A DNA stretch of 64,000 bases from Macrostomum lignano (Eukaryota). Location: the NCBI GenBank assembly GCA_002269645.1, contig NIVC01002278.1, forward strand, positions 123,816 through 187,815, written 5' to 3'. Both the position numbers and the translations under genes were made by a program. Under the pieces are notes generated by a model. That model saw only the letters and a program-made list of their open reading frames with translations. It was not told the origin of the DNA and did no database searches. Shown here one piece after another: positions 1,716 through 47,706 of the stretch; position 1 is the first letter of the stretch; each line of letters starts with the position of its first letter.

Positions 1716-2236
1716 CACAATCACAGCCTTCCCTGACACAATCACAGCCTAACCTGACACAATTACAGCCTATCCTGACACAATCACAGCTTTCCCTGAC
1801 ACAATCACAGCTTTCCCTGACACAATCACAGCTTTCCCTGACACAATCACAGCCTACCCTGACACAATCACAGCTTTCCCTGACACAATCACAGCCTACC
1901 CTGACACAATCACAGCTTTCCCTGACACAATCACAGCCTACCCTGACACAATCTGAATCTACCCTGACACAATCACAGCTTTCCCTGACACAATCCCAAT
2001 CTACACTGACACAATTACAGCCTACTCTGACACAATCCCAATCTACCCTGGCACAATTACAGCCTACTCTGACACAATCCCAATCTACCCTGACACAATC
2101 ACAGCCTACTCTGACACAATCCCAATCTACTCTGACACAATCACAGCCTACTCTGACACAATCCCAATCTACTCTGACACAATCACAGCCTACTCTGACA
2201 CAATCCCAATCTACCCTGACACAATTACAGCCTACC
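1716..2236. repeat. 21-bp minisatellite
   Basis: Unit cctgacacaatcacagctttc and variants; explains the TQSQLSL and DCVRV ORFs. Confidence 0.95.
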
Positions 2237-3159
2237 ATAGCCAAAATCATATAAAAGCAGATGGCCCTATTTGTTTGACACTTCTCCCTTACCCCAGAAG
2301 CCAAAACTCTACTTCCCACGCTAACAAGCGTTGAAATTGAGTCCCAATTAGAATTTAGTCCTACTCAGGGTATCTGATTGAAGCGCTCAACTCAAAAGAA
2401 GTCGCTAAAGCTATTGTGCAGAAAATTTCTCATAAACCGGGCAAATCAGGCAAATAATTATTCCCTTTGACAACACTAAAGCTCTCATGACCTACTCAGG
2501 CAAATCGCAAAGGCAGACAACTAAAAAAGAGCCGAAAAAGGGACTGCAAATGGAAACACGATGACAAGTGGCTCGAAATTTCAATGCTAAAAAAGCTTCA
2601 ATATGAGAATTTAAAAAGGCGAGACAAAGAGACTACGACGTATGGCTGTGTTGATGGGGCGCTATCAAAGACGAGTCTGCATGAGCCAGCCTTTCTCGAT
2701 AGGGTGGATATTTTCCCTCAGACTAGAGGGGATTAGGGGGATACGAGAAAATCCTAAGCTATAGTCTCGAAATCCCCCGCCTAAAACCCTTGCTGCTGCG
2801 ATTGCCCGCGTTTGTCAGGCCCAGCATCATGGAGGCACCGCGGCGGCAGGACCCGTGGAACTGCCTGCAGGCTTGTAGGAATGCATTGCCGCGATTATTG
2901 CAGGCTCAGACAGTCACGTGCTGTGCTTGCCGGGCTAAGCAAGATATACATAGCCCTTGTCTCGTGCACTCAGCAATGAATCTGTGCAGTGCTTATACAT
3001 GTATAGTTACAGTCGAGAGAAAGTTCTGTACAGCTGCATTGGCTACTTATAACTGAGCGTTGGGTTGCTTTTTACGGACGATAACTATTTAAGATATCGT
3101 TATCGATATCTTAAATATCTTAAATATCTTAAATATTGCGGTATATGATACCAGATAAG

Positions 3160-6331: not shown

Positions 6332-7540
6332 GAGTTCACAGTGCTGAATTTATAGACATACAAATTTTGGGTTAATAAGCCAAGTTGTCGGTGTTTCTAA
6401 ATGAAAAAAGCGCATTAGATATACCGAACTGGATGAAGCCCCAGTAGAAGTACCCGTTGAAATAATTGAGCAGAAAAAAATTTATCAAAAGAATTCTTAT
6501 ACATACAGCTAAAGTTAATTTTGTTTTTAGAATCTATTTTGGCACTGCTAGAAGTTGAGGCTTGAGAAGCATTCTTATAAATATACACTGTACTGTTGGC
6601 AAACTTCAGCTTCACTTGGCACACTTGCTGCTCCTAGAAGAGGGAGAGAGCCCCCCGATAGTTAGCAATAAATAAGACTGAAGCACGAAAACAGGATGTA
6701 AAGCCTGGCTCGAAATAAATCGTAATGTATGGCTGCATTTCAAAACCAGATGCAAACAGTTTAAAGCAGTCTGTAAATCGAGCTGACTGTTGCTATGCGG
6801 AGTGCTGCAATCGCTTCCGATATGCACAGAAGAATGCAGAGACTTTAAGGCTGTAAAAAGTGTTCCCTTCTACAGCCGGCCAAGTTGCTAGAGAGACTGT
6901 CGCCCTGCACGCGGTTTCCGCCCGGGTTTGTGCCAACACGCCGCCCCCTCCCACCTCCTTCACAGCATCAAGGCAGCGCGGGCAATTCAGTGGGATTATT
7001 TGCCTAACTACGCATATAGCCACAGGCCATGCACTGTCGCGGCGGTCAATTCAACAGTAGGCCGGACGGACAGACAGAACAAGGCGGGAGAGAGTAAGGC
7101 TTGTAAGCAGCAATCGAAATGACCAAAATTGCATGGCCAGCAGGCCTCAAGGGAAAGCCTGAACGGCGGGTCGAGTTAAAGCACCGAATTGGATAGCGGC
7201 AGCTTGAAGATGGCCTCTGGCCCACTTGACTAAATTTGCGGCGCCCGCAAGCGCTCGATGCCACGGCTTAAAATTCACGCTCGAATGCTCGGAATTAGAA
7301 AATATAATAATAATGCTGACTTGTAAGTGCTTCGCTCCCTGCTAGGCTCTGCTTTGAGTTGCAAGGTTGGAACTCGAATTCTTTTAACAGTTTTACTCAA
7401 CAAGTGGCCAGTATTTTTACGAATGAAATTTAAAGCGTCCGCGGAGACTTCCCTACAGACGGAATTTGCTGTGACAATCTAATCAAATCCTTGATTAGAG
7501 AAGGAGAATTCGATTCGGTTTGGAAACTACGCGTTTTTTC

Positions 7541-17037: not shown

Positions 17038-18630
17038 TCATCGACCAACGGCGACAATGTCCATCTGCTCGAACTCGTCGACGGTAGCTCCGACGCCGAC
17101 GTTGCCGCCGCCAGGGATGATCACCGCGGCAGCCGCGTCTGTTGGCAGCTGGACTCGGAGCGGCCGGACTGGCGAGGCCGGCAGGCACCAGTCCAGCAGT
17201 GGCGGGCTACCAGCCGGCGGCCGAGCCCGGAACTTGACGCCGCCGTCGACATCATCGTCGGTGTTGCTGTTGTCGTCGTCTCCCATAGTCGGCTCCGGCG
17301 AAACCATGGCAAGGCCGCGGCCAACAGTGTGCCCGACCGGGTCCTCCTCCATGGCCTCTTCAGTGTAGCCTTCGATCTCTTGATCAGCTGCCAAGTCATC
17401 CTCGTCAGATTCGGCCGCTGAATAATTAGACGAAGGCGGCGGCAACGGCCGGCGAAGGCTTCGATAAGGGCTGGGCAGCAGAAGGCCAGGAAGCGGAGGC
17501 GGCGACGGCTGCGGCGCTGCCTGGTGGCCTGACGCGGCCGCGGCCTCGGTGCTGGACGCTGTGGAAGCTTCGCGACCACGTCGGCGACCGCTGTGCGCAG
17601 CCGGCGGACTCGACGACAGCGAGGAGTTCTGCGCTGCCTGATGCTGTTGAGATCGTGTAGCCATTAGTCTACAAGCCAGCACGGATAGGGCTGGCGCTGA
17701 GCATGGACTCACGTACTGATTAGTAACCAAGTGTTCAGCAAGCGAGCGCATCGATGAAAATTCGGTGCCAAGTAGTTTTTGAGCCCATTGGACCACAACG
17801 GAGTCGTGTAAGCCGCCGCCGCCGCTGCTGAGGCTACAATCTTCATCTGAAGAAGCCTGCTGTGCAGCAGCCGCAGCAGCAGCCGTGGCCAAGGAGCCTG
17901 ACGGCGCAAGCAGTTCAGTCAGTCGTGGCTGCGGTGGACAGGCCTGCTTGCGGAGGCCGCCGTAGCAGTACTTGGACTGTCCCCGCTGGCCAAGCCGGCG
18001 AGGTTTAACGCCGGGAAAGGCGCGCTTCATAGCTTTGCCAAAATCGGCCGTGTTTAAAGGCTTACAACCGTGGGCCTCGCAATACTGCTTATAGTCTGAA
18101 TAGACTTCGTCTTTGCGCAGACAGACTGTCGGATCCTCTTCTAAGTGGCTGAGAATCCACGTGTGCGCGTGCGCCTGCTCAGCCTGGTTGCTAAGCTGCA
18201 GCGGTTGCTGATGCTGCGACTGGCCAGACAGGCACTGATCGCCAGGGGCTCCGCCTCCGCCAGGAAGTTGCAGATATAAAAGCAGCTTCTCTAGGTCTGA
18301 TAGAGAGCGTACAGAGTCTAGAATGGAGCAGACTCGCTCCCGCGCTTCAACTGACACGTCAGATTCAAGATCGTCGCGCAGTGTATCCATTAACGGCGTG
18401 GCGCCGCGACTGGAGTGGCTACCGCTGCTGGCGCTAGCACTGGCGCCAGCACATTCGGCTGCTGGCTCAGTAACTTCTCGCTTCATCGAGACAATAGTTG
18501 GACTAAAAATGTTCATATTGCTACTGGCAGTAGCAGACGATAGTACAGAAGAAAATGCTGCATTTTTTTGTTGGGCACTGGCAAAATTGCCGCTGCCTAT
18601 TATTTTAGTTGCGGCGTTGCTGACCGGCAT
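17038..18630 (-). CDS. RFX7: RFX5/RFX7-type winged-helix transcription factor, 530 aa, single coding exon
   Basis: LSDLEKLLLYLQLP N-terminal motif. The RFX DNA-binding domain (WILSHLEEDPTVCLRKDEVYSDY...FGKAMKRAFPGVKPRRLGQRGQSKYCYGGLRK) and the downstream QWAQKLL...LAEHLV segment match the RFX5/7 subfamily as I recall it. Confidence 0.88.
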   Translation of the reverse strand: MPVSNAATKIIGSGNFASAQQKNAAFSSVLSSATASSNMNIFSPTIVSMKREVTEPAAECAGASASASSGSHSSRGATPLMDTLRDDLESDVSVEARERVCSILDSVRSLSDLEKLLLYLQLPGGGGAPGDQCLSGQSQHQQPLQLSNQAEQAHAHTWILSHLEEDPTVCLRKDEVYSDYKQYCEAHGCKPLNTADFGKAMKRAFPGVKPRRLGQRGQSKYCYGGLRKQACPPQPRLTELLAPSGSLATAAAAAAAQQASSDEDCSLSSGGGGLHDSVVVQWAQKLLGTEFSSMRSLAEHLVTNQYVSPCSAPALSVLACRLMATRSQQHQAAQNSSLSSSPPAAHSGRRRGREASTASSTEAAAASGHQAAPQPSPPPLPGLLLPSPYRSLRRPLPPPSSNYSAAESDEDDLAADQEIEGYTEEAMEEDPVGHTVGRGLAMVSPEPTMGDDDNSNTDDDVDGGVKFRARPPAGSPPLLDWCLPASPVRPLRVQLPTDAAAAVIIPGGGNVGVGATVDEFEQMDIVAVGR

Positions 18631-19790: not shown

Positions 19791-20241
19791 TAAGCACTAC
19801 CTTAAAATAAAAGGATATTATAATCTTTTAAAATTATACAATATATTACACTATGTATAAACCAACTAGAAGTATTTATTTTTCCTTTTACTTTTTTAAA
19901 ATGAGCAACTCAATTAGGCTCATTGTAATGAATACTAAATAACAAAGCTAGGTAAAGGTACAAATGGGTTATAAGTTAATTTTATTAGCTTAATGTGCCT
20001 GCTAAAACTTTTAGCAATAATGTGGTGAAAGCAATTGAATCCTAGGCAAACCCAGATAAATGCGAATGGAGTTTGAATCTAAATTCTAATGAGCTAATCA
20101 ATGTATATATAGTTGTAATGACCTATTTAGATATTTGAAATTTTTGGCAATCTATTAAGTCTAATATATAGAGAGCAATAGACAATCTCACTCTGAGCTC
20201 CACACAATGCATGCTTAGAAAGAAACCCAACTCAAATTATA

Positions 20242-20909
20242 TGTACAGGGCCCTTCCCGATTTCTTTCTAAAAATAGCTATCGTTTATTACACTTTAAAT
20301 TCACGCCAAAAACTACGACGCATTTTTGTTTTAATATTCGTGTTTTGTATAATATTTTACGCGAACTAATTTTTGTTTAAAATCTACTAGAATTTTACTA
20401 TAAATACAAGCAAATTCGGCGGAGGGAGAACCAACCTCGCGCATCGCGGTTCGCAATCATACCGATTAATAGCAGTTAATAAGAGTTCCGAGAAAATAAG
20501 AATTGAAGAAGTGTTTTCTGTTTTCATTCCTTAAGAAGTAAGAGTGAAGTAGACGAAGGTGTGTACCGTATATACTACTAAGAAGGAAAGTGTTGAGTAG
20601 TAAGAAATACCCAGACCTATTCTAAGAAACATTTCTCGGATTATTCTAAGATTGATAAACTCACAATTTATTAATAGGATAATCCTGGTGGCAGCTACCA
20701 ACCTAAGAAGAACACTTAAGAGATTAGTAAATTAGCCCTGTGATAGCTTTTGGTGACAGTGTGAAATTACTATTAAGAAGAAAGAATCACCCCTGAAACA
20801 ACTTTGGTGGCAGCTAGTAAGGCTAGCAAAAGGAATAATTAAGAGCCCTACGACAGCTTTTGGTACCAGCAGTGGGATAACTAAAGAGGGAAGCAAACCC
20901 CCTGTTACA
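20242..20909 (+). repeat. 5' LTR (668 bp)
   Basis: Starts tgtacaggg and ends ccccctgttaca; TATA box tataaata at 20399. About eight substitutions versus the 3' LTR by eye. Confidence 0.93.
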
Positions 20910-21001
20910 GCTTTTGGTGGCAGCGTAAAGGATCAGAGAAACGGCGAAGAACTCCGACAGTTGAAGATCATCAGTAAGAAATTTTAAGATTAAGAAGAGA
21001 G

Positions 21002-21595
21002 ATGGCTAATGCCAATGATGCAATCGCTAGGCTAGCTGAAGAGCTGTCAAAGAAGCTAGGATTAGGAACGGAGAAGCAATTAGAGATTGAGAAGTACACA
21101 CTTGACAAAAACATCAGGCAGTGGATCAATGCATTCGAGCAACAATGCAGGATGCAAGGACTGAATGGAGAAAAACGAAAAGTAGCCCTTTTCGCCAATC
21201 TGGATATCCCAGAAGAATTGAAGCGGAGGATGAGCCATAGACAAGACCAGCAGCACTATCAAGACATTAGGCGACAAGTTATTGAGCAGTTCGAAAGGAA
21301 GCAGCAGAAGCAGGAGGAGAATGGAGTCCAAGCCCTAGTCGAGTGCTTGATGACCCTAACGGTCATTCTGACAAATGTAAATTTAGGATTAAACCCAGAA
21401 CAGCAGCAGCAGCAGTACCAGTACCAGACAGCGCCAAAACCGCGCCCGCCGCACAGATTCAGTGGCGCCAGACCAGAGCTAAGCCCTGGTCATTGCTTCT
21501 TCTGCGGGAAGCCAGGACCAATCAGGCCACAAGCAGGTCACAGATGCAGAGTGAATCTAGGAGAAGCCAGACAGCGAGCTCAGGAGAAAGGGTGA
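21002..21595 (+). CDS. Truncated Gag-like protein (197 aa)
   Basis: Follows the PBS. Capsid-N-like pattern KY..D..IRQWINAFEQQC..QG.....K; degenerate zinc knuckle CFFCGKPG(P). Confidence 0.7.
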   Translation: MANANDAIARLAEELSKKLGLGTEKQLEIEKYTLDKNIRQWINAFEQQCRMQGLNGEKRKVALFANLDIPEELKRRMSHRQDQQHYQDIRRQVIEQFERKQQKQEENGVQALVECLMTLTVILTNVNLGLNPEQQQQQYQYQTAPKPRPPHRFSGARPELSPGHCFFCGKPGPIRPQAGHRCRVNLGEARQRAQEKG

Positions 21596-22118
21596 GATTA
21601 GAGCCTGTAAGCACGAAGCGATTATGCGAAGAAGATTATACATGTATATAGTATCAATAAAAAAACATAAAAATCTATAAAATCATCTAAAAAGAAAAGA
21701 AAAATGTTAATCATTAGCATTGTATAATGTAGGAAACGCACGCAATTGCTTACTGGAACCCTAAAAGGGCCGTTTTGACAAAGAAAATTCAGAAAATCAA
21801 CAAAAACAGGTTTAATTCGGTTAGTTAGGCTGCTCAGAAAGTAAGATAGGAAGTCTACAATAAGAGTCGGAGTAGTGAGAAGCTCTGTGGAGAAGAAATA
21901 ATTAAAGAATTAATGTAATAAACTCTGACAATAGGCAGTAGAGAGACGCGAATACAGGACGCTGAGAAGTTGAATTGAAGAAGAAGACGAGGGATTTGAA
22001 AAGAGAAGCACGAGAATTTGAGAGGAATTGAGAATTAGAGAAGAAAAGGTGTGTTAGAAGCAAGAGGTAGACTAAAGACTTTTTGTTACCATTGAGTGAC
22101 GTAGTCTAGTCACACCCT

Positions 22119-22928
22119 CAAGCGCTAATAGACACCAAGTTGAAGAAGAGAATCAAGAGTAGTCGAGAAGCGAATTTGAAGAAGTGAATTCATGAGAAGA
22201 ATTCGAAGAAAAATCGAGAAGAAGTACAGAAGCAAAGTCAAAGAAGTGAAACAGAAGAATTGAGAGTTTGATAAAGTGAGGAGACAGGAGAAAATTGTGA
22301 GAAAAAGCCAAGAAAAATCCGATCAGCTATCTTTTTGTGTCCCTCTTTAGATCAGATATCATTGCTGTCTAAATGGATGCGATAGTCTGTGAAGAACAAA
22401 AAAATACGAGAAAATTCGAGAGATGAGAAAAGAGAGAATTTGTCAGAGAAAATCTAAAAATAGAAAGAACGGAAATTTCTTGATCCCGCTTAGAAAGGCA
22501 CGGCTCAGCCATTTTAAAGACCTTTCTCAAGGATCCTGAAAATCGGAAAGAGACATTTGAAAGATGGAATACTGGAAGGAGTGCTCACTGTTCTTTTGGA
22601 GAAAGCAAGGTAGTCCACTGACAGCCAATTTTAGCCCATTCCTGAGAACATAGCATTTTTCGGAAAGTAAAGGCTTGAAACCAAACTAATTCAATAATTG
22701 CATAACTAACTATCGAATAGAGAAGAAATTGAGCAAGAAGATGAGTCAACAGATAGTGAGAAAACTGAGCCAGCCGAAACAGATGACGCATTAGAATTAG
22801 ATAGGAGAGAAAGAAATGAAGACGAAAGGATTGAGCACAGGCCGCATTATAATTTGAGACCAAGAAGTGAGAGAGTTGTCACCTCAGGATTCGCCCCCCG
22901 CAGGCGATACGGCCATTATCTGAAATGA
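22119..22928 (+). pseudogene. Decayed pol remnants
   Basis: ALIDT (protease-like) at 22122-22136. KVVH* near 22620. An ATG-less 72-codon frame at 22710-22928 has an acidic tail and HYNLRPR, typical of gypsy integrase C-termini. No RT is recognisable. Confidence 0.5.
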
Positions 22929-23162
22929 TCGAATTTGTACCATGCCAAGTATTAAATTGTAAATAGAATTTGCTTAAAAAATTGCTCTGTATATAGAAAT
23001 CTGTTGTAAATAATAAAAATTGACAAAAATATAAAAACTTTAAAAATATAAAAACACAAAAACATTGCGCATTACTAGTAGTAGAAATGAGAGAATTGTG
23101 TGAAGGAATCCGAAGACAATAAATAATCCTAGCAACGCTTAGCAACGGTGCGCTGCTCTGAG

Positions 23163-23324
23163 CCAATGAGAGCCCGCGAAGCGAACGCTAGAAAGCCACT
23201 ATGGTTGACGGACACTTGACCCCATTAAAACCCCTTCGAAAGCGCGAACACAACGATGCGGTCCAGTTTCTCGGCTGGCCGCATATAAATACGAAACCCC
23301 ATAGAGCTCCCAGAGCATCATATT
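23163..23324 (+). promoter_or_regulatory. Internal Pol II promoter for the accessory ORF
   Basis: CCAAT at 23163, TATAAAT at 23284, and an Inr-like tcatatt about 30 nt downstream (23318), 40 nt before the ATG at 23365. Confidence 0.55.
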
Positions 23325-23364
23325 TCACAACATTTAGCTATCAATTAAGGAGCTGTCTTGTATA

Positions 23365-24372
23365 ATGAGCAACGTTGACGACATATTAGAAGAATTGCTG
23401 GGCGGAGCTCTGTCCGACAGTGACATCTCGCAAGACGAGGCCCCACAACAGCCGGCGCCGCCGCCGAGAGCGCCAACGCCGCCGCCGAGAGCGCCAACGC
23501 CGCCGCCGAGAGCGCCAACGCCACCGCCAAGGATGTCGACTCCACCACAAGCAGGACCATCATCTTCATCGTCTGCTGAAGCTCCACTCCGTTGTCCGAC
23601 TCGACCACGACCGCCAGTCAACGCAAATAAGAGGCCGAGACCGCCTTCTCCGGTATCTGGCCGACGGCTACAAGGCGACGGACCGACACCGCCCAAGAAG
23701 GCAGTTCTGTTACAGGCCGCAGCCGCTGCCCCAGTCCAGGCCTACGCCGCTCCAGATGGTCGAGGACCGACGGCCGCCGCCGCAGCTTCAGGGCGTCGGA
23801 CAATCCAACTGCACCCAGCCGACGCGCCTCAGCCAAGACGTCCGGCCGCCGCTGCTGCGCGCCCGACAGCCGCCGCTGCACGCCCAACTGCTGATCGTCA
23901 GGTCGCCGCTGCTGGTTCCGGTCGAGCCGCCACCGCTGATCGTCCGGCTGCCGCTGACCACCAGGCCGGCGCTCCCGATCGTCAGGCCGCTGCTGCTGTG
24001 CCTCGACCACCGCGACCTGCACCAGACACGAGCTATCAGGAAGCTGCCCACCGTCTGCTCGAAGCTGGCGAGCATGTCGAGCGTGTCCGATACGGAATCA
24101 GGCAGTACTTGCAGCGAATTGGTCATCTGCGATTGGATCAGGCCTTGCCGCAACGATCTCAGGTCTGGCCTGCTATTCGAGCATTGCGCGAAATCGGCAC
24201 TCAGGCCGATGGCATCGCCCTGTTGCGACACATCTGCGATGAGCTCCAACGCGTCATGCGAGCCGACACCCAGGTTGTACAACGCAGACTTTTGAACATT
24301 GAGATGAGGTGGATTTTTGGACTTTTTGGTTGGCCATATTTCCGCAATCTTCCGGATCCTTGCAATTTCTAA
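23365..24372 (+). CDS. Accessory ORF in the env position (335 aa): Pro/Ala-rich N-terminus plus helical C-terminal domain; function unknown
   Basis: Uninterrupted ATG-to-TAA frame with a 21-bp PPRAPTP triplication; no signal peptide or clear transmembrane helix. Confidence 0.75.
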   Translation: MSNVDDILEELLGGALSDSDISQDEAPQQPAPPPRAPTPPPRAPTPPPRAPTPPPRMSTPPQAGPSSSSSAEAPLRCPTRPRPPVNANKRPRPPSPVSGRRLQGDGPTPPKKAVLLQAAAAAPVQAYAAPDGRGPTAAAAASGRRTIQLHPADAPQPRRPAAAAARPTAAAARPTADRQVAAAGSGRAATADRPAAADHQAGAPDRQAAAAVPRPPRPAPDTSYQEAAHRLLEAGEHVERVRYGIRQYLQRIGHLRLDQALPQRSQVWPAIRALREIGTQADGIALLRHICDELQRVMRADTQVVQRRLLNIEMRWIFGLFGWPYFRNLPDPCNF

Positions 24373-24766
24373 AGTTAGGCTGCTATTCCTGTTGCGATTT
24401 TTAGTGCTTTTACTTTGCAAGTATCTTTTTACCATTGCAATAATACCGCCTTTGCAGCAAAATTCTTTTCTACGCCTTTAATACTCTTTCGTTGTATTTT
24501 ACTACCTAAATCATTGCTTTATCACTTACTAGTATGTTTTCGTATTGACTAGTGTTTATCAGTGCTTTATTAGTAGATCTAATGTTTTTTTTTTGCCTAG
24601 TACGAATAGTAGTGTGATAATTGCTTGTTAGTTATAGAGCACCAACACTTTTCTACACCTATCATGCACTCTTAAAATTTTTCACATTTTGCACAGTAGA
24701 AAATTTTTGCACTCAATTCACTATCAGTATATTTCGTTTAAAAAATTTTTTTTAGAGGAGGTAGGT

Positions 24767-25708
24767 TGTACAGGGCCCCTCCCGATTTCTTTCTAAAAAT
24801 AGCTATCGTTTATTACACTTTAAATTCACGATAAAAACTATGACGCATTTTTGTTTTAATATTCGTGTTTTGTATAATATTTTACGCGAACTAATTTTTG
24901 TTTAAAATCTACTAGAATTTTACTATAAATACAAGCAAATTCGGCGGAGGGAGAACCAACCTCGCGCATCGCGGTTCGCAATCATACCGATTAATAGCAG
25001 TTAATAAGAGTTCCGAGAAAATAAGAATTGAAGAAGTGTTTTCTGTATTCATTCCTTAAGAAGTAAGAGTGAAGTAGACGAAGGTGTGTACCGTATATAC
25101 TACTAAGAAGGAAAGTGTTGAGTAGTAAGAAGTTGCGAAGTAGATCTGAAGTAATACGTGTAAGAATAACCGGAGGCTGTGACCCTCTGATCTCGGTAAC
25201 GCCCAAGGACTTGCAAAGTACATGAAATACATATACCAGTAAGACAAAATACCGCTCAGGCCATTATTAAGTAGAACGCTACCAGAATAATAGAACGCTA
25301 CCAGAATAATCAGAAGAGTACACCTTTCAGGGCTAATAGTTTTTCTAAGAATAATACTCAGACTAAATACTCAGACTAAATACTCAGACTAAATACTCAG
25401 ACTAAATACCCAGACCTATTCTAAGAAACATTTCTCGGATTATTCTAAGATTGATAAACTCACAATTTATTAATAGGATAATCCTGGTGGCAGCTACCAA
25501 CCTAAGAAGAACACTTAAGAGATTAGTAAATTAGACTTGTGATAGCTTTTGGTGACAGTGTGAAATTACTATTAAGAAGAAAGAATCACCCCTGAAACAA
25601 CTTTGGTGGCAGCTAGTAAGGCTAGCAAAAGGAATAATTAAGAGCCTTACGACAGCTTTTGGTACCAGCAGTGGGATAACTAAAGAGGGAAGCAAACCCC
25701 CTGTTACA
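24767..25708 (+). repeat. 3' LTR (942 bp)
   Basis: Matches the 5' LTR except for an extra 274 bp at 25132-25405. Confidence 0.93.
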
Positions 25709-27344
25709 TATACATTATATAAAATATAAAATATAAAGGCTAAATACCTTATCAGCTAATTAGTACTACTTTTAAAATGTTTTGAATATGCATTTTTACA
25801 GTTTACCTGGGTTAGACCCTTGCCAACTAGCTAGATTGGCTTGGTGTTAAATCTAGATGATCTATGACTATATAAGGACAAGTGGCTTAATTATGGTTTA
25901 AGGATTAAAATTCCATATATGGCATATTAATATTTTGAGAATAAAAGAAAAACTATAAATTATATTTTGCAAAACAAAATAATGCAAAATAATCTATAAG
26001 AAAAATGCTAAAAAATAATATATAAGGAATGGAAATCCATTGAATTTGAATAGTTCAAAAGTTATGTCATCTATAACTTGGAAAATCAGACCTTTTGAGC
26101 AAAAATGATCACAGTGCCTTAGCTTATAGGAAAAATGCATTACAGGAATATCAAAAAATGACACTAAAAATATTATAACTTTTTTACTACTTAACTAAAA
26201 TTCAAAAGTAAGGTTTCATTTTTTTTATACAACAAATGTAATGTCTATCATATGGTATCAAAAAGTAAATCAAACTCAAAAAATTTTAAATCTAGAAAGC
26301 CACCCTATTCACTATTGTGCTTTACTTTAAATCCTTTAGCCAGGCTTAGTATACCAAGGTTGGCATACTAAGTACAAGTATATTCTAAGCGTATTAATTT
26401 AAACATCACAAAATATATATTTGCCTATGTAGGCCTAAAACAAAATCTAAAATAAATTTGTTATGTCATTATGAGCATATTTTAAATCTATTTGATAGTT
26501 TGTAGTTGCAATTTATGAAATAAATAGTTGCAATTTATTTTGCTGCTACCAAAGCTGTCAAACTAGGCTTAAAATTTGGTCCTGGACATTTGCACAATTT
26601 GCCATCAGGTGTTTTTTAAGAAAGAACTTGGCAGGTCCTTCAGCTAAAGTTTTTTGCATACTTACGCAAGTTAAGTAGGCCCTTTACTTTAGATATAGTT
26701 ATGCGTCTTGCCTTTACTTCCGCATTTGTTACTTTTAAATATATGCTTCAGTTTAGCTTTGGCCATGCAATGCTGGTCATAAGGCCTTAGAAGCTTAAGG
26801 CATTGGAACCTGTAGTGACAACAACAAATGGCGTTAAAAAGTGTACTCTGTGTACGTGCAAAGCCGACGACGAAAATATATAAAACCATTTAAAAATACT
26901 AACATTTACAACAAATCAAACAGTAAAAAGTAAAAAAGTAATATTTTATTTTATAGTAAACACTTTTTTGTATTTTAAGTATTTACGTAACAATCTTTGT
27001 GTTGAATAATGTTGATATTTTAAACTTTTAGTTTCAAATTTATGTTTTTCAAGGAAATAAAATAAATCAAGTGAAAAACGTTATGGATCTCTTAGACACG
27101 CGGCGGCCATGTCTGTAATATAGAATGCGTCTCACTGGAGAAAGTCAGAGTCAAAGATACAGACAGCAGCTGTGTCAGTAAGCCTGCATAGCGCCAGCGG
27201 CCGTGTCGTTATCATAAAAATATTTCACACTTAGACTTCACACTAGACTAGAGACTGAGACAGAGGGTGGCCGTGTCCCTAATATAGACTCCTGGTAGCG
27301 ATGCTCGTTTTATAAATAGTAGAAAAATGAAGGCCAACACCAAC

Positions 27345-27710
27345 ATATAAGTAAATTATTATATCCAACGCGTTTCGACACAAGCGGTCATCTTCAGGGC
27401 TTGCACTCATGGTTCACAATTCCGTATATTTAAATAAATAAAGAAAATCAAAAACTGTACAGGGCAATAGACGAATGGGTTCAGTCCGGTCGATAATTGT
27501 ACATTAAGAGACGAAAATAAATTAAATTATTAGGCCATCACACAGAACAAACAAACACAGAGCAAACAATATTAGCAGGGAGAGAGCCGCAAACCCACAC
27601 CAAGCCTAGAAAACTTTGAGCTGTAAATTGGCTCCTCCACCAGCAAGCTAAGTATTGAGACTAGGTTTATGATGCTTAATGTGTCGTAGGGCACTTTTAT
27701 TATTCTCTAA
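27345..27710 (-). mobile_element. Penelope-like element 3' remnant with a hammerhead ribozyme motif
   Basis: Minus strand encodes RHIKHHKPSLNT*...LQLKVF* (GIY-YIG endonuclease C-terminal pattern, 27606-27710), followed by ccCTGAAGAtgaccgcttgtgtcGAAAcgcgtt at 27365-27400. Confidence 0.65.
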
Positions 27711-28441
27711 ATCCCACCGCAATCACCAAGTTGTTGTAAGGGGGGGGGTTTGGCTGTAATTCTAGAATTTTATTATATTAGCTTGTTAAATTCGTTATGA
27801 GCTACTAAAATACGGCGTAACTGAGGTAAGACTATGGGCTTTCACGTAAGCACGGATTGCCCTGGTAGCGCGCAGTGCCCGAGTGGCAAGACACTGTTCA
27901 GCTAGGGGGAGAGGGGGAAAGACTAAGTCCTAAAGCAGCGTCCTCCAATGGATCGAGGTTGCCCGGTGAATTTCAATTTCCTCTTACGGATTTGCTCTTG
28001 TCAGGTACGACTTTCTCATTGGTTGTTCAATTCGAATATTTTATTTGGATATTCCTCCTCTTTCTATTGGCTGATTACGCCCCTGCTCTTTGCTAGTACG
28101 CTATTGGCTCTTCGACAATTCGTCTCTTGCTCTTGGTAATTTCTACCTCTAGTCCAATGAGCATTCGCTCTTAGTTTTTAGCAAATGAAGGAAGGTTTGG
28201 AACGCTTCTTCAATTTTATAGGCAATTCGCCTATGAACCAAAAGGTCTAAAACTTCGGTTGCCTCTCTGGGCACAAAATTCGCTTCTATTTATACTAAAA
28301 TTGGGGTGGGGAACAAGACGCGTTTAAACAAAGTTCTAAAAATATACGTTTCCATAGTAAAGGCGGGAATTTAAAACTTGGCCTCTCTCAAATGTGCCAG
28401 GCTTCCAGCACTCTGAGTTTGCCATCAAATCTACATCTATT

Positions 28442-37639: not shown

Positions 37640-39189
37640 CGACCTGTTAGTATTCGAGTTCTGCAGTTCAGCTCTCAGGCGGCGTCTGCGGCGGCTGCTG
37701 CCTCGGCGGCGCCGGGCTCGCATTCGCCCGTGCTGGCGGACGCTGTCACCGAGCTGCTGGTTGGCGCCTGCCAAGGAACTCGCCGCCCCGGCAGCCGGAT
37801 TCTGCTGCTCGACGCCACATTTGGCGCCGGCGGTCACACCCGACGACTGTTAAGAGGGGCGTCCGAAGCGTCGACGCCGATCACAGTGTACGCCAACGAT
37901 CGCGATCCTGCCGCCTACCGGCTTGCCGGACAGCTGTCCGAGTCTTTGCCGCCCGGCTCCGACTCCGCCTCGGTGGTGCCGCTGTTGGGGAAATTCTCCC
38001 AGCTGGCCGAGCACGCTGAGCTGACGGGCGTTGAGGGCATCGATGGCGCCCTGTTTGACCTGGGCCTGTGCTCAGCACAGCTGGATGAGGCAAGGCGCGG
38101 CTTCGCCCTGTCAGCTGACGGGCCGCTCGACATGCGCATGGGCGGCCCGGCCGAGGCCGACTCGCCAACCGCCGCCGATCTCGTCAACGGGCTGGAGACC
38201 GGCGACCTCGCCGCTCTGTTTCGCGCCTACGGCGAAGAGTCAATGGCGCGCCGGCTGGCCCGGGCCGTGGTTGAGCGGCGCAGCGGGCCGCGCGGACCTC
38301 TGCGCACGACGAAACAGCTGGCCGATTGCCTGGCGGACGCTGTGGGCAGCGCGCGTCGGAAAGACAGCTTGGGCCGCAGTGCGCACCCGGCGACGCGAGT
38401 GTTTCAGGTGAGAGGAAACAGATAGTCAAGCCTGATGTTTTGTACCTTTGCTAAGCGTTGTTCTGATACATATCGGCTATTAGTTGATCCGTTTAAAAAT
38501 GATTAGTATGGTGAACATGTTTTTTGTTATCATGTCGGTCTGAAAGGACGGTCTAAATAATTAGACAGAGTTTTCTGTACTTCGATACATATCGGCAAGC
38601 AAAGAATTTGTTTTAAAAATATTCTTAAGTAGTATAAATATATTTTTTGTAAAATTTTGTTCAAGTATATATATTCGTCTAAATTACTATTCTAGGTGCC
38701 TTCAATAGTTTCAATACGCATCGGACATAAATCATTTAAATAGTGTCAGTAGTATAAATGGAGTTTATTGTCATAATATATAAATATGAAAAATAAAAAC
38801 CACAATCGCAGGCGCTGCGGATCGCGGTGAACAACGAATTTATTGAGCTTCTCAGCGGGCTCCAGCTGGCCAGACAGCTGCTCAAGCCCGGCGCGCCTTG
38901 CCTGGTGCTGTCCTTCCACTCGCTTGAGGATCGCCTGGTCAAGCGCGTCTTCGCCAACCGGTCGCTGGACGACCTCTGCTGTCCGGCCGCCTGGGCCGAC
39001 GCTTTCAAGCGGCAACGATCGCCGCAGTCGCTCCACGCCAAGCCGCCGCCGCCGCTGCAGCCGCAGCTCTGGCAGCTGGTGCGGTTCGATTCGAATCGGG
39101 GCGAAGATTACCTGATGGCCGGGCCGGCCGAGGTGGCCGAGAATCCTCGGGCCCGTTCGGCTCGGCTGCGAGTCGGACTGAAACTGTGA
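37640..39189 (+). CDS. METTL15: Mitochondrial 12S rRNA m4C methyltransferase (RsmH/MraW family); start codon not in this exon
   Basis: Exons about 37640-38407 and 38812-39189 join as HPATRVFQ|ALRIAVN. Motifs HSPVL, DATFGAGGH, FDLGLCSAQLD, GPLDMRM, SFHSLEDRLVK and NPRARSARLR. Confidence 0.92.
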
Positions 39190-47624: not shown

Positions 47625-47706
47625 GTCGCGATGGCCGAGTGGTTAAGGCGTTGGACTAGAAATCAAATGGGGTTTCCCCGCGCAGGTTCGAATCCTGCTT
47701 GCGACG
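47625..47706 (+). tRNA. tRNA-Ser(AGA)
   Basis: 82-nt cloverleaf with a long variable arm; acceptor stem GTCGCGA/TTGCGAC; anticodon loop CTAGAAA; TTC loop; downstream T-run terminator. One G:A mismatch in the anticodon stem. Confidence 0.88.

What the first reader, a model, noticed from the sequence alone, without database searches (positions are those of the whole stretch)
20677..20932. Repeat-spacer array of stacked attachment-site plus PBS modules forming the LTR's U5 end
Seen: TGG-initiated motifs at 20686, 20751, 20805, 20861 and 20915 (spacing 65, 54, 56, 54). Modules 2-5 read ccctgtgATAgcttt-TGGTGACAGT, cccctgaaACAactt-TGGTGGCAGC, ccctacgACAgcttt-TGGTACCAGC and ccccctgttACAgcttt-TGGTGGCAGCG; module 1 keeps only TGGTGGCAGC. 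The intervening ~25-40 nt are all different. The ccctg..aca part is the inverted repeat of the LTR's left end (tgtacaggg). The 3' LTR carries modules 1-4 (25485, 25550, 25604, 25660) and stops exactly at the ACA of module 5 (25708), followed by the TATA TSD. Known: an LTR's right end is set by where the tRNA primes, a few nt after the terminal CA. Inference: module 5 is the working att+PBS, and modules 1-4 are earlier or alternative termini absorbed into U5 by priming further downstream. The LTR would thus keep an ordered, CRISPR-looking record of end/primer modules. These could allow alternative priming or act as decoys for 3' tRNA fragments that silence PBS-bearing RNAs. I do not know of a description of this architecture.
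Basis: partly seen in the sequence, partly recalled or inferred. Interest (0 to 1): 0.92.

Follow-up and report, generated by a model that had tools for sequence, protein, structure and literature searches.

The report
Stacked LTR-end plus tRNA-primer-site modules
A recently inserted flatworm LTR retrotransposon carries five tandem copies of its "LTR end + tRNA-Leu primer site" junction, and sister copies end their LTRs at different copies, so the LTR boundary of this family moves.

Summary
The window is Macrostomum lignano contig NIVC01002278.1. It holds a 5.5-kb non-autonomous Ty3/gypsy element (20242..25708). Its boundaries are proven by a 4-bp TATA duplication and by two paralogous contigs with the empty site.

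Its U5 end carries five modules. Each has the form [CCCTG..ACA terminus + 4-5 nt + TGGTGGCAGC...]. The TGG motif is the complement of the 3' end of tRNA-Leu(AAG), matching 19/19 in sister copies. Module 5 is the working terminus and primer-binding site (PBS); modules 1-4 lie inside both LTRs.

Three further TSD-flanked copies differ in module content:
- L001 and L005 have 4 modules, two of them with perfect 19-nt PBSs.
- L006 has 3 modules, and its LTR ends at module 3, which is internal in the others. L006 is about 99.9% identical to L005 internally.

So modules are real alternative or former LTR termini, and the boundary shifts. The "CRISPR-like record" and "tRF decoy" ideas are not supported or not tested.

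Similar arrays occur in unrelated LTR-type elements from metagenomes, some with a 5'-decayed to 3'-perfect gradient. I found no published description. This is a new variant of a known kind, of moderate to high interest.

The parts
20238..20241 (+). Left copy of the 4-bp target-site duplication TATA
   Evidence: The empty-site paralogues L002 and L004 read ...CTCAAATTATA|CATTATAT, with a single TATA.
20242..20909 (+). 5' LTR (668 bp), TGTACAGGG...CCCCCTGTTACA. TATAAA at 20399. Lacks 274 bp that the 3' LTR has.
   Evidence: It is 98.8% identical to the 3' LTR outside the indel.
20679..20704 (+). Module 1: ATA-ATCC-TGGTGGCAGCtaccaacct. It has 10 contiguous nt of the tRNA-Leu primer-binding site (PBS). 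The terminus part is degenerate.
   Evidence: It is conserved in L001, L005 and L006, and in similar form in the distant relative L019.
20736..20769 (+). Module 2: CCCTGTGATA-GCTTT-TGGTGACAGTGTGAAATTA. The CA has mutated to TA here (it is ACA in L001, L005 and L006). The PBS is decayed.
20790..20823 (+). Module 3: CCCCTGAAACA-ACTT-TGGTGGCAGCtagtaaggc. Its orthologue is the working LTR terminus of L006 and carries a perfect 19-nt PBS in L001 and L005.
20846..20879 (+). Module 4: CCCTACGACA-GCTTT-TGGTACCAGCAGTGGGATA. It matches the tRNA-Leu(AAG) complement at 15/18. It is absent from L001, L005 and L006 and present in the old relic in L001.
20898..20933 (+). Module 5, the working module: LTR terminus CCCCCTGTTACA (ends at 20909), 5-nt gap GCTTT, then PBS TGGTGGCAGCGtaaaggat. 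The first 11 nt match contiguously, followed by a further GGAT.
   Evidence: The same imperfect PBS tail occurs in L006, and a similar one in L007.
20934..21001 (+). Leader between the PBS and the gag start codon
   Evidence: It aligns with the leaders of L001, L005 and L006 (AGAGAAACGGC...).
21002..21595 (+). Gag-like ORF1 (197 aa, degenerate zinc knuckle)
   Evidence: 86% identity to M. lignano PAA86674.1. Distant relatives carry Retrotrans_gag and zf-CCHC.
23365..24372 (+). ORF3 (335 aa, Pro/Ala-rich, no Pfam family). Its homologues lie downstream of pol in the autonomous relative L007.
24754..24765 (+). Polypurine tract AGAGGAGGTAGG, one base before the 3' LTR
24767..25708 (+). 3' LTR (942 bp). 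It carries modules 1-4 (TGG at 25485, 25550, 25604, 25660) and ends at the ACA of module 5 (25697..25708).
25709..25712 (+). Right copy of the target-site duplication TATA

Best explanation
The array is a reiterated junction between the U5 terminus and the primer-binding site (PBS) of a Ty3/gypsy-type LTR retrotransposon family of Macrostomum lignano. The window copy is non-autonomous, with gag and ORF3 but no pol.

Each module has three parts:
- the sequence integrase uses as the right LTR end (CCCTG..ACA);
- the 4-5 nt that integrase trims;
- a PBS complementary to the 3' end of tRNA-Leu(AAG).

Shown:
- Module 5 was the terminus and PBS used in the transposition that made this copy.
- Modules 1-4 are carried inside both LTRs.
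- Sister copies carry 3 or 4 modules. One uses module 3 as its LTR end.
- The penultimate module of two copies has a perfect 19-nt PBS.

Inferred:
- The cassette arose by tandem duplication, or by reverse-transcriptase template switching, across the LTR/PBS junction.
- Whichever PBS the tRNA primes fixes the U5 end of both daughter LTRs. Modules upstream of it become U5.
- Modules are lost when the PBS copies mispair during plus-strand transfer or recombination.
- A PBS that is used can be rewritten to a perfect tRNA complement, because plus-strand strong-stop DNA copies the primer. This would explain why the modules nearest the 3' end are the most tRNA-like.

The family therefore has a movable LTR boundary with spare termini and primer sites.
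For: Boundaries:
- Contigs L002 and L004 carry the empty site with a single TATA.
- The LTRs are 98.8% identical, and the polypurine tract is in place.

tRNA identity:
- L001 and L005 read TGGTGGCAGCGGTGGGATT.
- This equals the first 19 nt of the published tRNA-Leu(AAG) 3'-end probe (PMC6103689).
- It is also the complement of tRF-3001a from tRNA-Leu AAG/TAG (PMC10591036).
- The relative L019 carries about 30 nt of the complement, running into the T loop. Only copying of the tRNA would produce that.

Variable termini:

| Copy | TSD | Modules | LTR ends at |
|---|---|---|---|
| L001 | GTAC | 4 | CCACTGTTACA |
| L005 | CTAA | 4 | CCACTGTTACA |
| L006 | TATT | 3 | CCCCTAGGACA (module 3) |

- This table rests.
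- All three copies have LTR pairs at least 99.9% identical.
- L005 and L006 are about 99.9% identical over the 4-kb internal region. They differ by one 52-bp module and by the PBS tail.
- Module 3 of L001 and L005 has the same terminus and gap as the working end of L006, and a perfect PBS.

Constraint on the modules:
- Cores are 56-84% identical, whereas spacers are barely above shuffles.
- The motif is strongly over-represented.

The architecture recurs:
- The autonomous relative L007-L010 has 2 modules.
- Metagenome contigs L013, L016 and L017 carry 62-bp units, and L015 carries 39-bp units followed by a CCHC gag.
- Matches to the 18-nt tRNA complement along the arrays are 11, 14, 13, 18, 18 in L015 and 16, 16, 18, 18 in L017.

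Accessibility: the array RNA is not structured (z = +1.26), which is compatible with accessible sites.
Against: - Only four full copies could be sampled.
- No copy was found with intact modules downstream of its working PBS. That would be the direct product of priming at an upstream module.
- The difference between L005 and L006 can be explained by deletion or recombination between PBS repeats, without alternative priming.
- The M. lignano tRNA-Leu gene itself was not seen. The identity rests on mammalian sequences and on the L019 T-loop extension.
- In the window copy, modules 1-4 keep at most 10 contiguous PBS nt, and module 2 has lost its CA. They may be inert here.
- In L016 all five modules are near-perfect, so a 5'-to-3' gradient is not universal.
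Confidence: 0.7

Rival explanations
1. This is a plain decaying tandem duplication in U5. The LTR/PBS junction was duplicated a few times by slippage. Only the last module has ever mattered, and the upstream ones are neutral relics with no present or past role as termini.
For: - Modules 1, 2 and 4 of the window copy are decayed.
- The spacers keep weak mutual similarity (p = 0.018).
- The leader of L001 also contains tandem partial repeats (GAT[TC]AGAGAAACGGC x3-4), so the region is generally prone to duplication.
- Differences in module number are what unequal recombination in any tandem repeat would give.
Against: - L006 integrated with module 3 as its LTR end and has a clean TSD.
- Module 3 of L001 and L005 has a perfect 19-nt primer-binding site (PBS), while neighbouring sequence differs.
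- Cores are far better kept than spacers.
- Module 1 is conserved even in a relative whose Gag is only 34% identical.
- The same architecture recurs in unrelated elements.
Confidence: 0.2
2. The repeated motif works mainly as something other than a terminus or primer site. Candidates are a sponge or decoy for 3' tRNA-Leu fragments, a platform that recruits several tRNA-Leu molecules into particles, or a repeated protein-binding or regulatory site such as the repeats in the 5' UTR of insect gypsy-like elements.
For: - 3' tRFs repress LTR retrotransposons through the primer-binding site (PBS), according to the abstract of bioRxiv 10.64898/2026.01.22.698655.
- The working PBS of the window copy, L006 and L007 is interrupted (TGGTGGCAGCG-TAAA-GGAT). 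That could lower tRF pairing.
- Tandem repeats in the 5' UTR of gypsy-type elements can be regulatory (PMC3286476).
Against: - No data on small RNAs or protein binding were available.
- The conserved unit is exactly terminus + gap + PBS, with the geometry of a real LTR end, and one module is used as such in L006.
- No Rfam family and no significant RNA structure were found.
Confidence: 0.08
3. The pattern is a chance resemblance or an assembly artefact.
For: None, apart from the fact that Tandem Repeats Finder does not call the array.
Against: - The array is present in both LTRs.
- It is also present in three other TSD-flanked copies on other contigs, and in independent Logan and JGI assemblies.
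- The shuffle tests exclude chance.
Confidence: 0.01

Closest known systems
Canonical U5/PBS junction of tRNA-primed LTR retrotransposons and retroviruses (Ty3/gypsy; the Mag clade uses tRNA-Leu or tRNA-Ser)
   Same: - The LTR is bounded by TG..CA.
- A few nt are trimmed by integrase.
- An 18-nt primer-binding site (PBS) is complementary to a tRNA 3' end, there is a polypurine tract, and the TSD is 4 bp.
- Mag-like elements of Culex use tRNA-Leu (PMC3286476).
- Most M. lignano LTR families belong to the Mag clade (PMC12801592).
   Different: The junction is present 2-5 times in tandem. All but the last copy lie inside the LTR, and the copy that serves as the LTR end differs between sister elements.
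Engineered retroviral vectors with two primer-binding sites (MLV- and HIV-based dual-PBS vectors; recalled from memory, Voronin and Pathak 2003/2004, not found in the searchable library)
   Same: Two primer-binding sites (PBS) sit on one RNA. Either can initiate minus-strand synthesis, and the choice decides the structure of the product.
   Different: Those vectors are laboratory constructs. Here the arrangement is natural, each PBS comes with its own LTR terminus, and there are up to five.
cqgypsy_1 of Culex quinquefasciatus (Osvaldo lineage): atypical PBS region (PMC3286476)
   Same: tRNA-derived sequence follows the 5' LTR, and a 26-nt direct duplication of the LTR end lies on both sides of it. 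That is a duplicated LTR terminus associated with tRNA-templated sequence.
   Different: In cqgypsy_1, two whole tRNA copies are inserted once. Here there are only 18-19-nt primer-binding sites, reiterated as modules and carried inside both LTRs.
Tandem repeats in the 5' UTR or U5 of insect gypsy-type elements (gypsy insulator; Mag-like cqgypsy_24/25/66)
   Same: Repeated units lie close to the LTR/leader border.
   Different: Those repeats lie downstream of the primer-binding site (PBS), are not complementary to tRNA, and act as regulatory sites.
CRISPR repeat-spacer arrays
   Same: Only the visual pattern is shared: a conserved core alternates with variable stretches.
   Different: The host is a eukaryote, the cores are diverged, and the spacers are orthologous between copies rather than acquired. 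No acquisition machinery is present.

Membership tests
LTR retrotransposon, Ty3/gypsy (Metaviridae-type) | Two direct LTRs bounded by TG...CA, with a target-site duplication | tested here: met
   LTRs are at 20242..20909 and 24767..25708. The TSD is TATA, and empty sites are present in L002 and L004.
LTR retrotransposon, Ty3/gypsy (Metaviridae-type) | Primer-binding site (PBS) complementary to a tRNA 3' end just after the 5' LTR, and a polypurine tract just before the 3' LTR | tested here: met
   The PBS starts at 20915 and matches 11 contiguous nt. Sister copies match the tRNA-Leu(AAG) complement at 19/19. The polypurine tract is at 24754..24765. The host tRNA gene itself was not seen.
LTR retrotransposon, Ty3/gypsy (Metaviridae-type) | pol with the domain order RT - RNase H - integrase | tested here: not met
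   The window copy has no pol, so it is a non-autonomous member. The related element L007 has RVT_1, RT_RNaseH, Integrase_H2C2 and rve in that order, and L019 has gag plus a 1299-aa pol.
Mag clade of Ty3/gypsy | Placement of the RT domain in the Mag clade by phylogeny | not tested
   No reference RT set was available. The only support is circumstantial: a tRNA-Leu primer-binding site as in Culex Mag-like elements, and Mag is the largest clade in M. lignano.
CRISPR-like repeat-spacer array | Near-identical direct repeats separated by unique spacers acquired from foreign DNA | tested here: not met
   The cores are only 56-84% identical. The spacers are orthologous between the window copy, L001, L005, L006 and an old relic.
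Simple tandem repeat (minisatellite) | Head-to-tail units with similarity spread evenly over the unit | tested here: not met
   Tandem Repeats Finder finds no array. Similarity is concentrated in the 25-nt terminus-plus-PBS core.
Natural multi-PBS element (works like engineered dual-PBS vectors) | More than one competent primer-binding site (PBS) on one genomic RNA, with products that depend on the site used | tested here: inconclusive
   L001 and L005 have two perfect 19-nt PBSs, each behind a terminus. L006 uses the upstream terminus. Actual initiation at both sites cannot be tested with sequence alone.

The most novel reading that the evidence does not exclude
Reiterated terminus-plus-PBS (primer-binding site) cassettes are a selected and recurrent adaptation of tRNA-Leu-primed LTR retrotransposons.
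- Spare primer sites and LTR ends let an element shift its LTR boundary and renew or alter its PBS.
- They may also blunt host repression aimed at the PBS, for example by 3' tRNA fragments.
- Because a used PBS is overwritten by the primer, the array would also keep a partial record of which tRNA-Leu species primed at each position.
Probability: 0.2. Interest if true: 0.8.

Novelty: new variant of a known kind. Interest (0 to 1): 0.62.

Why it matters
LTR boundaries are normally treated as fixed features of a family. They are set by one primer-binding site (PBS) and one terminus.

Here closely related, very young copies end their LTRs at different members of a tandem set of terminus-plus-PBS cassettes. 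This gives a natural system for three questions:
- how primer-site choice, plus-strand transfer and integrase end recognition shape LTRs;
- how U5 grows and shrinks;
- whether redundancy at the PBS helps elements escape PBS-directed host defences.

There is also a practical consequence. LTR annotation tools that expect one PBS directly after the LTR will misplace boundaries or split such families.

M. lignano is transgenic-tractable and its LTR elements can be induced (PMC12801592), so the model is testable.

Tried and rejected
- Tandem Repeats Finder on 20000..26000 reported no array at the site.
- The Rfam scan of 20200..21100 gave no hit.
- The RNA fold of the array was less stable than 91 of 100 shuffles, so there is no structural signal.
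- No tRNA-Leu gene was found in the window or in any fetched locus. The only tRNA gene is tRNA-Ser(AGA) at 47625.
- Assigning modules 2 and 4 to other tRNA-Leu isoacceptors, using the human probes, was inconclusive. Edit distances differ by only one.
- No heat-shock elements were found in these LTRs.
- Exact look-ups of the window ORF1 and of P0038 were not on record.
- Metagenome hits L012, L014 and L018 are an unrelated repeat that happens to contain the 16-mer, not PBS modules.
- Five literature searches for natural tandem or duplicated PBSs found nothing relevant beyond the Culex cqgypsy_1 case. The library is incomplete, so this is absence of evidence only.
- The CRISPR analogy was considered and rejected (see the membership test).

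Full report
**Abbreviations.** PBS = primer-binding site. att = the LTR-terminal sequence that integrase recognises.

**1. What is there**

Reading the sequence confirms the five TGG-initiated motifs at 20686, 20751, 20805, 20861 and 20915. Modules 1-4 recur in the downstream LTR at 25485, 25550, 25604 and 25660. That LTR ends at the ACA of the fifth module (25708).

The exact 10-mer TGGTGGCAGC occurs five times in the 64-kb window, all in these two clusters. The expectation is 0.15, and no shuffle out of 100 reaches 5. A composite terminus+gap+PBS pattern gives 5 hits against 0.06 expected. Tandem Repeats Finder does not report the array, because the units are too diverged.

**2. Host and element**

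- The gag-like ORF1 (21002..21595) is 86% identical to a Macrostomum lignano protein.
- The neighbouring RFX gene (17038..18630, minus strand) is 100% identical to M. lignano PAA58942.1.
- Locus L003 of contig NIVC01002278.1 is identical to the window.
- Two paralogous or allelic contigs (L002, L004) align to both flanks at 94-99.8% and lack the element. They read ...CTCAAATTATA|CATTATAT with one TATA.

The element is therefore exactly 20242..25708 with a 4-bp TATA duplication, and it is a recent insertion. The LTRs are 668 and 942 bp. They are 98.8% identical apart from a 274-bp segment missing from the 5' LTR. A polypurine tract lies one base before the 3' LTR.

The 3.9-kb interior has gag and a Pro/Ala-rich ORF3 but no pol. 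Relatives show the family type:
- The Logan contig L007 has RT, RNase H and integrase in the Ty3/gypsy order, followed by an ORF3 homologue.
- L019 has a gag (34% identical over the matched stretch) and a 1299-aa pol.

The window copy is a non-autonomous member of a Ty3/gypsy family.

**3. Identity of the TGG motif**

In the sister copies L001 and L005 the site next to the 5' LTR reads TGGTGGCAGCGGTGGGATT.
- This equals the first 19 nt of a published probe for the 3' end of tRNA-Leu(AAG), TGGTGGCAGCGGTGGGATTCGAACCCACGC (PMC6103689).
- It is also the complement of the 3' fragment tRF-3001a of tRNA-Leu AAG/TAG (PMC10591036).
- In the distant relative L019 the match runs about 30 nt into the T loop and T stem. 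That is expected only if the sequence was copied from the tRNA primer.

No tRNA-Leu gene was present in any DNA I could reach. The flatworm tRNA itself is therefore inferred, not seen.

The working site of the window copy matches over 11 contiguous nt. It then has an interruption and a further GGAT (TGGTGGCAGCG-TAAA-GGATC). The same variant is the working site of L006, and a similar one that of L007. It is a stable family feature, not post-insertion decay.

**4. Anatomy of a module**

Each module consists of CCC(C)T..ACA, then 4-5 nt (GCTTT or ACTT), then the PBS. This is the geometry of a real right LTR end: terminal CA, a few nt removed by integrase, then the primer site.

Module 4 matches 15/18. 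Modules 2, 3 and 5 show G-to-A-rich decayed tails.
- Among modules 2-5 the 25-nt cores are 56-84% identical.
- The remaining spacers are barely more alike than shuffled sequence (summed p = 0.018).
- In the window copy, module 2 has ATA instead of ACA.
- Module 1 keeps ATA + ATCC before its 10-nt motif.

**5. Other copies: the decisive comparison**

Three further full copies lie on other contigs of the same genome, each with a perfect 4-bp TSD.

| Copy | TSD | LTR pair identity | Modules | LTR ends at | PBS state |
|---|---|---|---|---|---|
| window | TATA | 98.8% | 5 | att5 (CCCCCTGTTACA) | working site 11 nt contiguous + GGAT |
| L001 | GTAC | 99.9% | 4 (M1, M2, M3 + a last module orthologous to window M5) | CCACTGTTACA | both M3 and the working site perfect 19 nt |
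| L005 | CTAA | 100% | 4, same as L001 | CCACTGTTACA | as L001 |
| L006 | TATT | 99.9% | 3 | att3 (CCCCTAGGACA) | ACTT-TGGTGGCAGCGTAAAGGATT, then the leader |

L005 and L006 are about 99.9% identical across the 4-kb interior. They differ by one 52-bp module, by the PBS tail, and by a diverged patch in the LTR.

Module 3 is therefore internal to U5 in L001, L005 and the window, yet it is a proven integration terminus in L006. In L001 and L005 it has the same terminus and gap as in L006, together with a perfect PBS.

- An old relic LTR in L001 (minus strand, 6530..6990, about 72% identical) has M1, a fused M2/M3, M4 and a fifth terminus. The multi-module state is therefore old, and modules are lost independently.
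- The autonomous relative L007-L010 has two modules.

It contradicts his refutation criterion, that all copies have identical module content or that no tRNA matches.

**6. Generality**

One scan of metagenome contigs searched for two perfect PBS-Leu 16-mers 20-50 nt apart. It returned seven contigs.
- Three (L012, L014, L018) are an unrelated repeat.
- L013, L016 and L017 carry 62-bp units GTTACA-AATT-TGGTGGCAGCGGTGGGATA-spacer, in 2 to 5 copies.
- In L016 a 359-bp TG..CA-bounded unit with a GCAT duplication consists almost only of five such modules.
- L015 has five 39-bp units ATTACA-T-PBS, followed by a gag with a CCHC knuckle.

In L015, L017 and L001 the modules become more tRNA-like towards the 3' side. 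Matches out of 18 are 11, 14, 13, 18, 18 in L015; 16, 16, 18, 18 in L017; and 10, 10, 18, 18 in L001. L016 shows no gradient.

**7. How it most likely works**

Shown:
- the terminus and PBS used by each copy;
- the variable module number;
- the competence of module 3 as an LTR end;
- the tRNA-Leu identity of the motif.

Inferred from the established reverse-transcription scheme (the tRNA primes at the PBS, minus-strand strong-stop DNA defines U5, and plus-strand strong-stop DNA copies 18 nt of the primer up to m1A58):
- Whichever PBS is primed sets the U5 end of both daughter LTRs.
- Modules upstream of the primed site are carried into U5.
- A used PBS can be overwritten by a perfect tRNA copy. 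This would explain the two perfect sites in L001 and L005, and the gradient.
- With several PBS copies on the strong-stop DNAs, plus-strand transfer can pair the wrong copies and delete modules. This fits L006, whose junction keeps the PBS tail of the downstream module.
- New modules probably arise by template switching or unequal recombination across the repeats.

Other observations:
- The array RNA is unstructured (z = +1.26), and no Rfam family matches.
- The patchy divergence between the L005 and L006 LTRs suggests recombination between co-packaged RNAs.

**8. Comparison with what is known**

- The single U5/PBS junction is textbook.
- Mag-like Ty3/gypsy elements use tRNA-Leu or tRNA-Ser (PMC3286476).
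- Mag is the largest clade among the 137 M. lignano LTR families, but that study does not treat PBSs (PMC12801592).
- The closest natural analogue I found is Culex cqgypsy_1, where two tRNA copies follow the 5' LTR and are flanked by a 26-nt duplication of the LTR end.
- Engineered two-PBS retroviral vectors behave in a comparable way. I recall these from memory and did not retrieve them.
- Five literature searches found no description of natural tandem terminus-plus-PBS arrays inside LTRs. The library is incomplete.
- The CRISPR comparison fails, because the spacers are orthologous between copies and the cores are diverged.

**9. Verdict**

- The 'ordered record' is overstated, and the decoy idea is untested.

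I rate it a new variant of a known kind, interest about 0.6. The main limits are the small number of copies reachable with these tools, the unseen host tRNA, and the lack of direct evidence for priming at internal modules.

Noticed in passing
window 25132..25403 (3' LTR) versus 20605..20610 (5' LTR): The 5' LTR lacks a 274-bp segment that the 3' LTR and the L001-type LTRs have. The segment contains a 13-bp x4.8 repeat (AATACTCAGACTA) and a 19-bp x2.3 repeat. The two LTRs of one young element therefore differ in length by 40%.
   Followed up: partly
window 27710..27745 (minus strand) and 26542..26575 (minus strand): Two isolated relics of terminus-plus-PBS (primer-binding site) junctions of related elements: CTTACAACAACT-TGGTGATTGCGGTGGGATT and GACAGCTT-TGGTAGCAGCA. 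The second is also present in the paralogous contigs L002 and L004, so it is older than the duplication of the region.
   Followed up: partly
window 17038..18630 (minus strand): An RFX5/RFX7-like DNA-binding protein gene (RFX_DNA_binding, RFX5_N). The retrotransposon sits 1.6 kb upstream of its start codon in this copy only, out of three paralogous copies (BOX15_Mlig002899g1-3).
   Followed up: partly
window 23456..23528: A 21-bp x3.5 perfect tandem repeat inside ORF3 encodes PPPRAPT repeats. ORF3 is GC-rich compared with the rest of the element. Its homologues (P0033, P0034, P0036) have no Pfam family and lie downstream of pol in the autonomous relative.
   Followed up: partly
L001 6720..6890 (minus strand): A small insertion with terminal inverted repeats (CAGTGGCGCAACC...GGTTGCGCTACTG) and an 8-bp duplication AACAACTT. 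It interrupts one module of the old relic LTR and looks like a hAT-type MITE.
   Followed up: no
L016 minus strand 2224..2582: A 359-bp TG..CA-bounded unit with the target duplication GCAT in a marine metagenome contig. It consists almost only of five 62-bp terminus-plus-PBS(Leu) modules (PBS = primer-binding site) and begins with an inverted copy of the spacer. It may be a solo LTR or a minimal element made of modules.
   Followed up: partly
L019 190..232: The primer-binding-site (PBS) region of this autonomous relative extends about 30 nt into the T loop and T stem of tRNA-Leu (TGGTATGCAGCGGTGAGGATTCGAATACCCAC). This is a sign of read-through past the usual stop at m1A58 during plus-strand strong-stop synthesis. 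Three 55-bp tandem repeats follow in the leader.
   Followed up: no
L001 9742..9840 (the same in L005 and L006): The leader downstream of the working primer-binding site (PBS) holds three to four further copies of GAT[TC]AGAGAAACGGC, that is, the end of the PBS plus the start of the leader. Partial duplication therefore continues beyond the working module.
   Followed up: no
window 47625..47706 and 37730..38425: A tRNA-Ser(AGA) gene and an ORF with an MraW-type methyltransferase domain. Neither is related to the finding.
   Followed up: no
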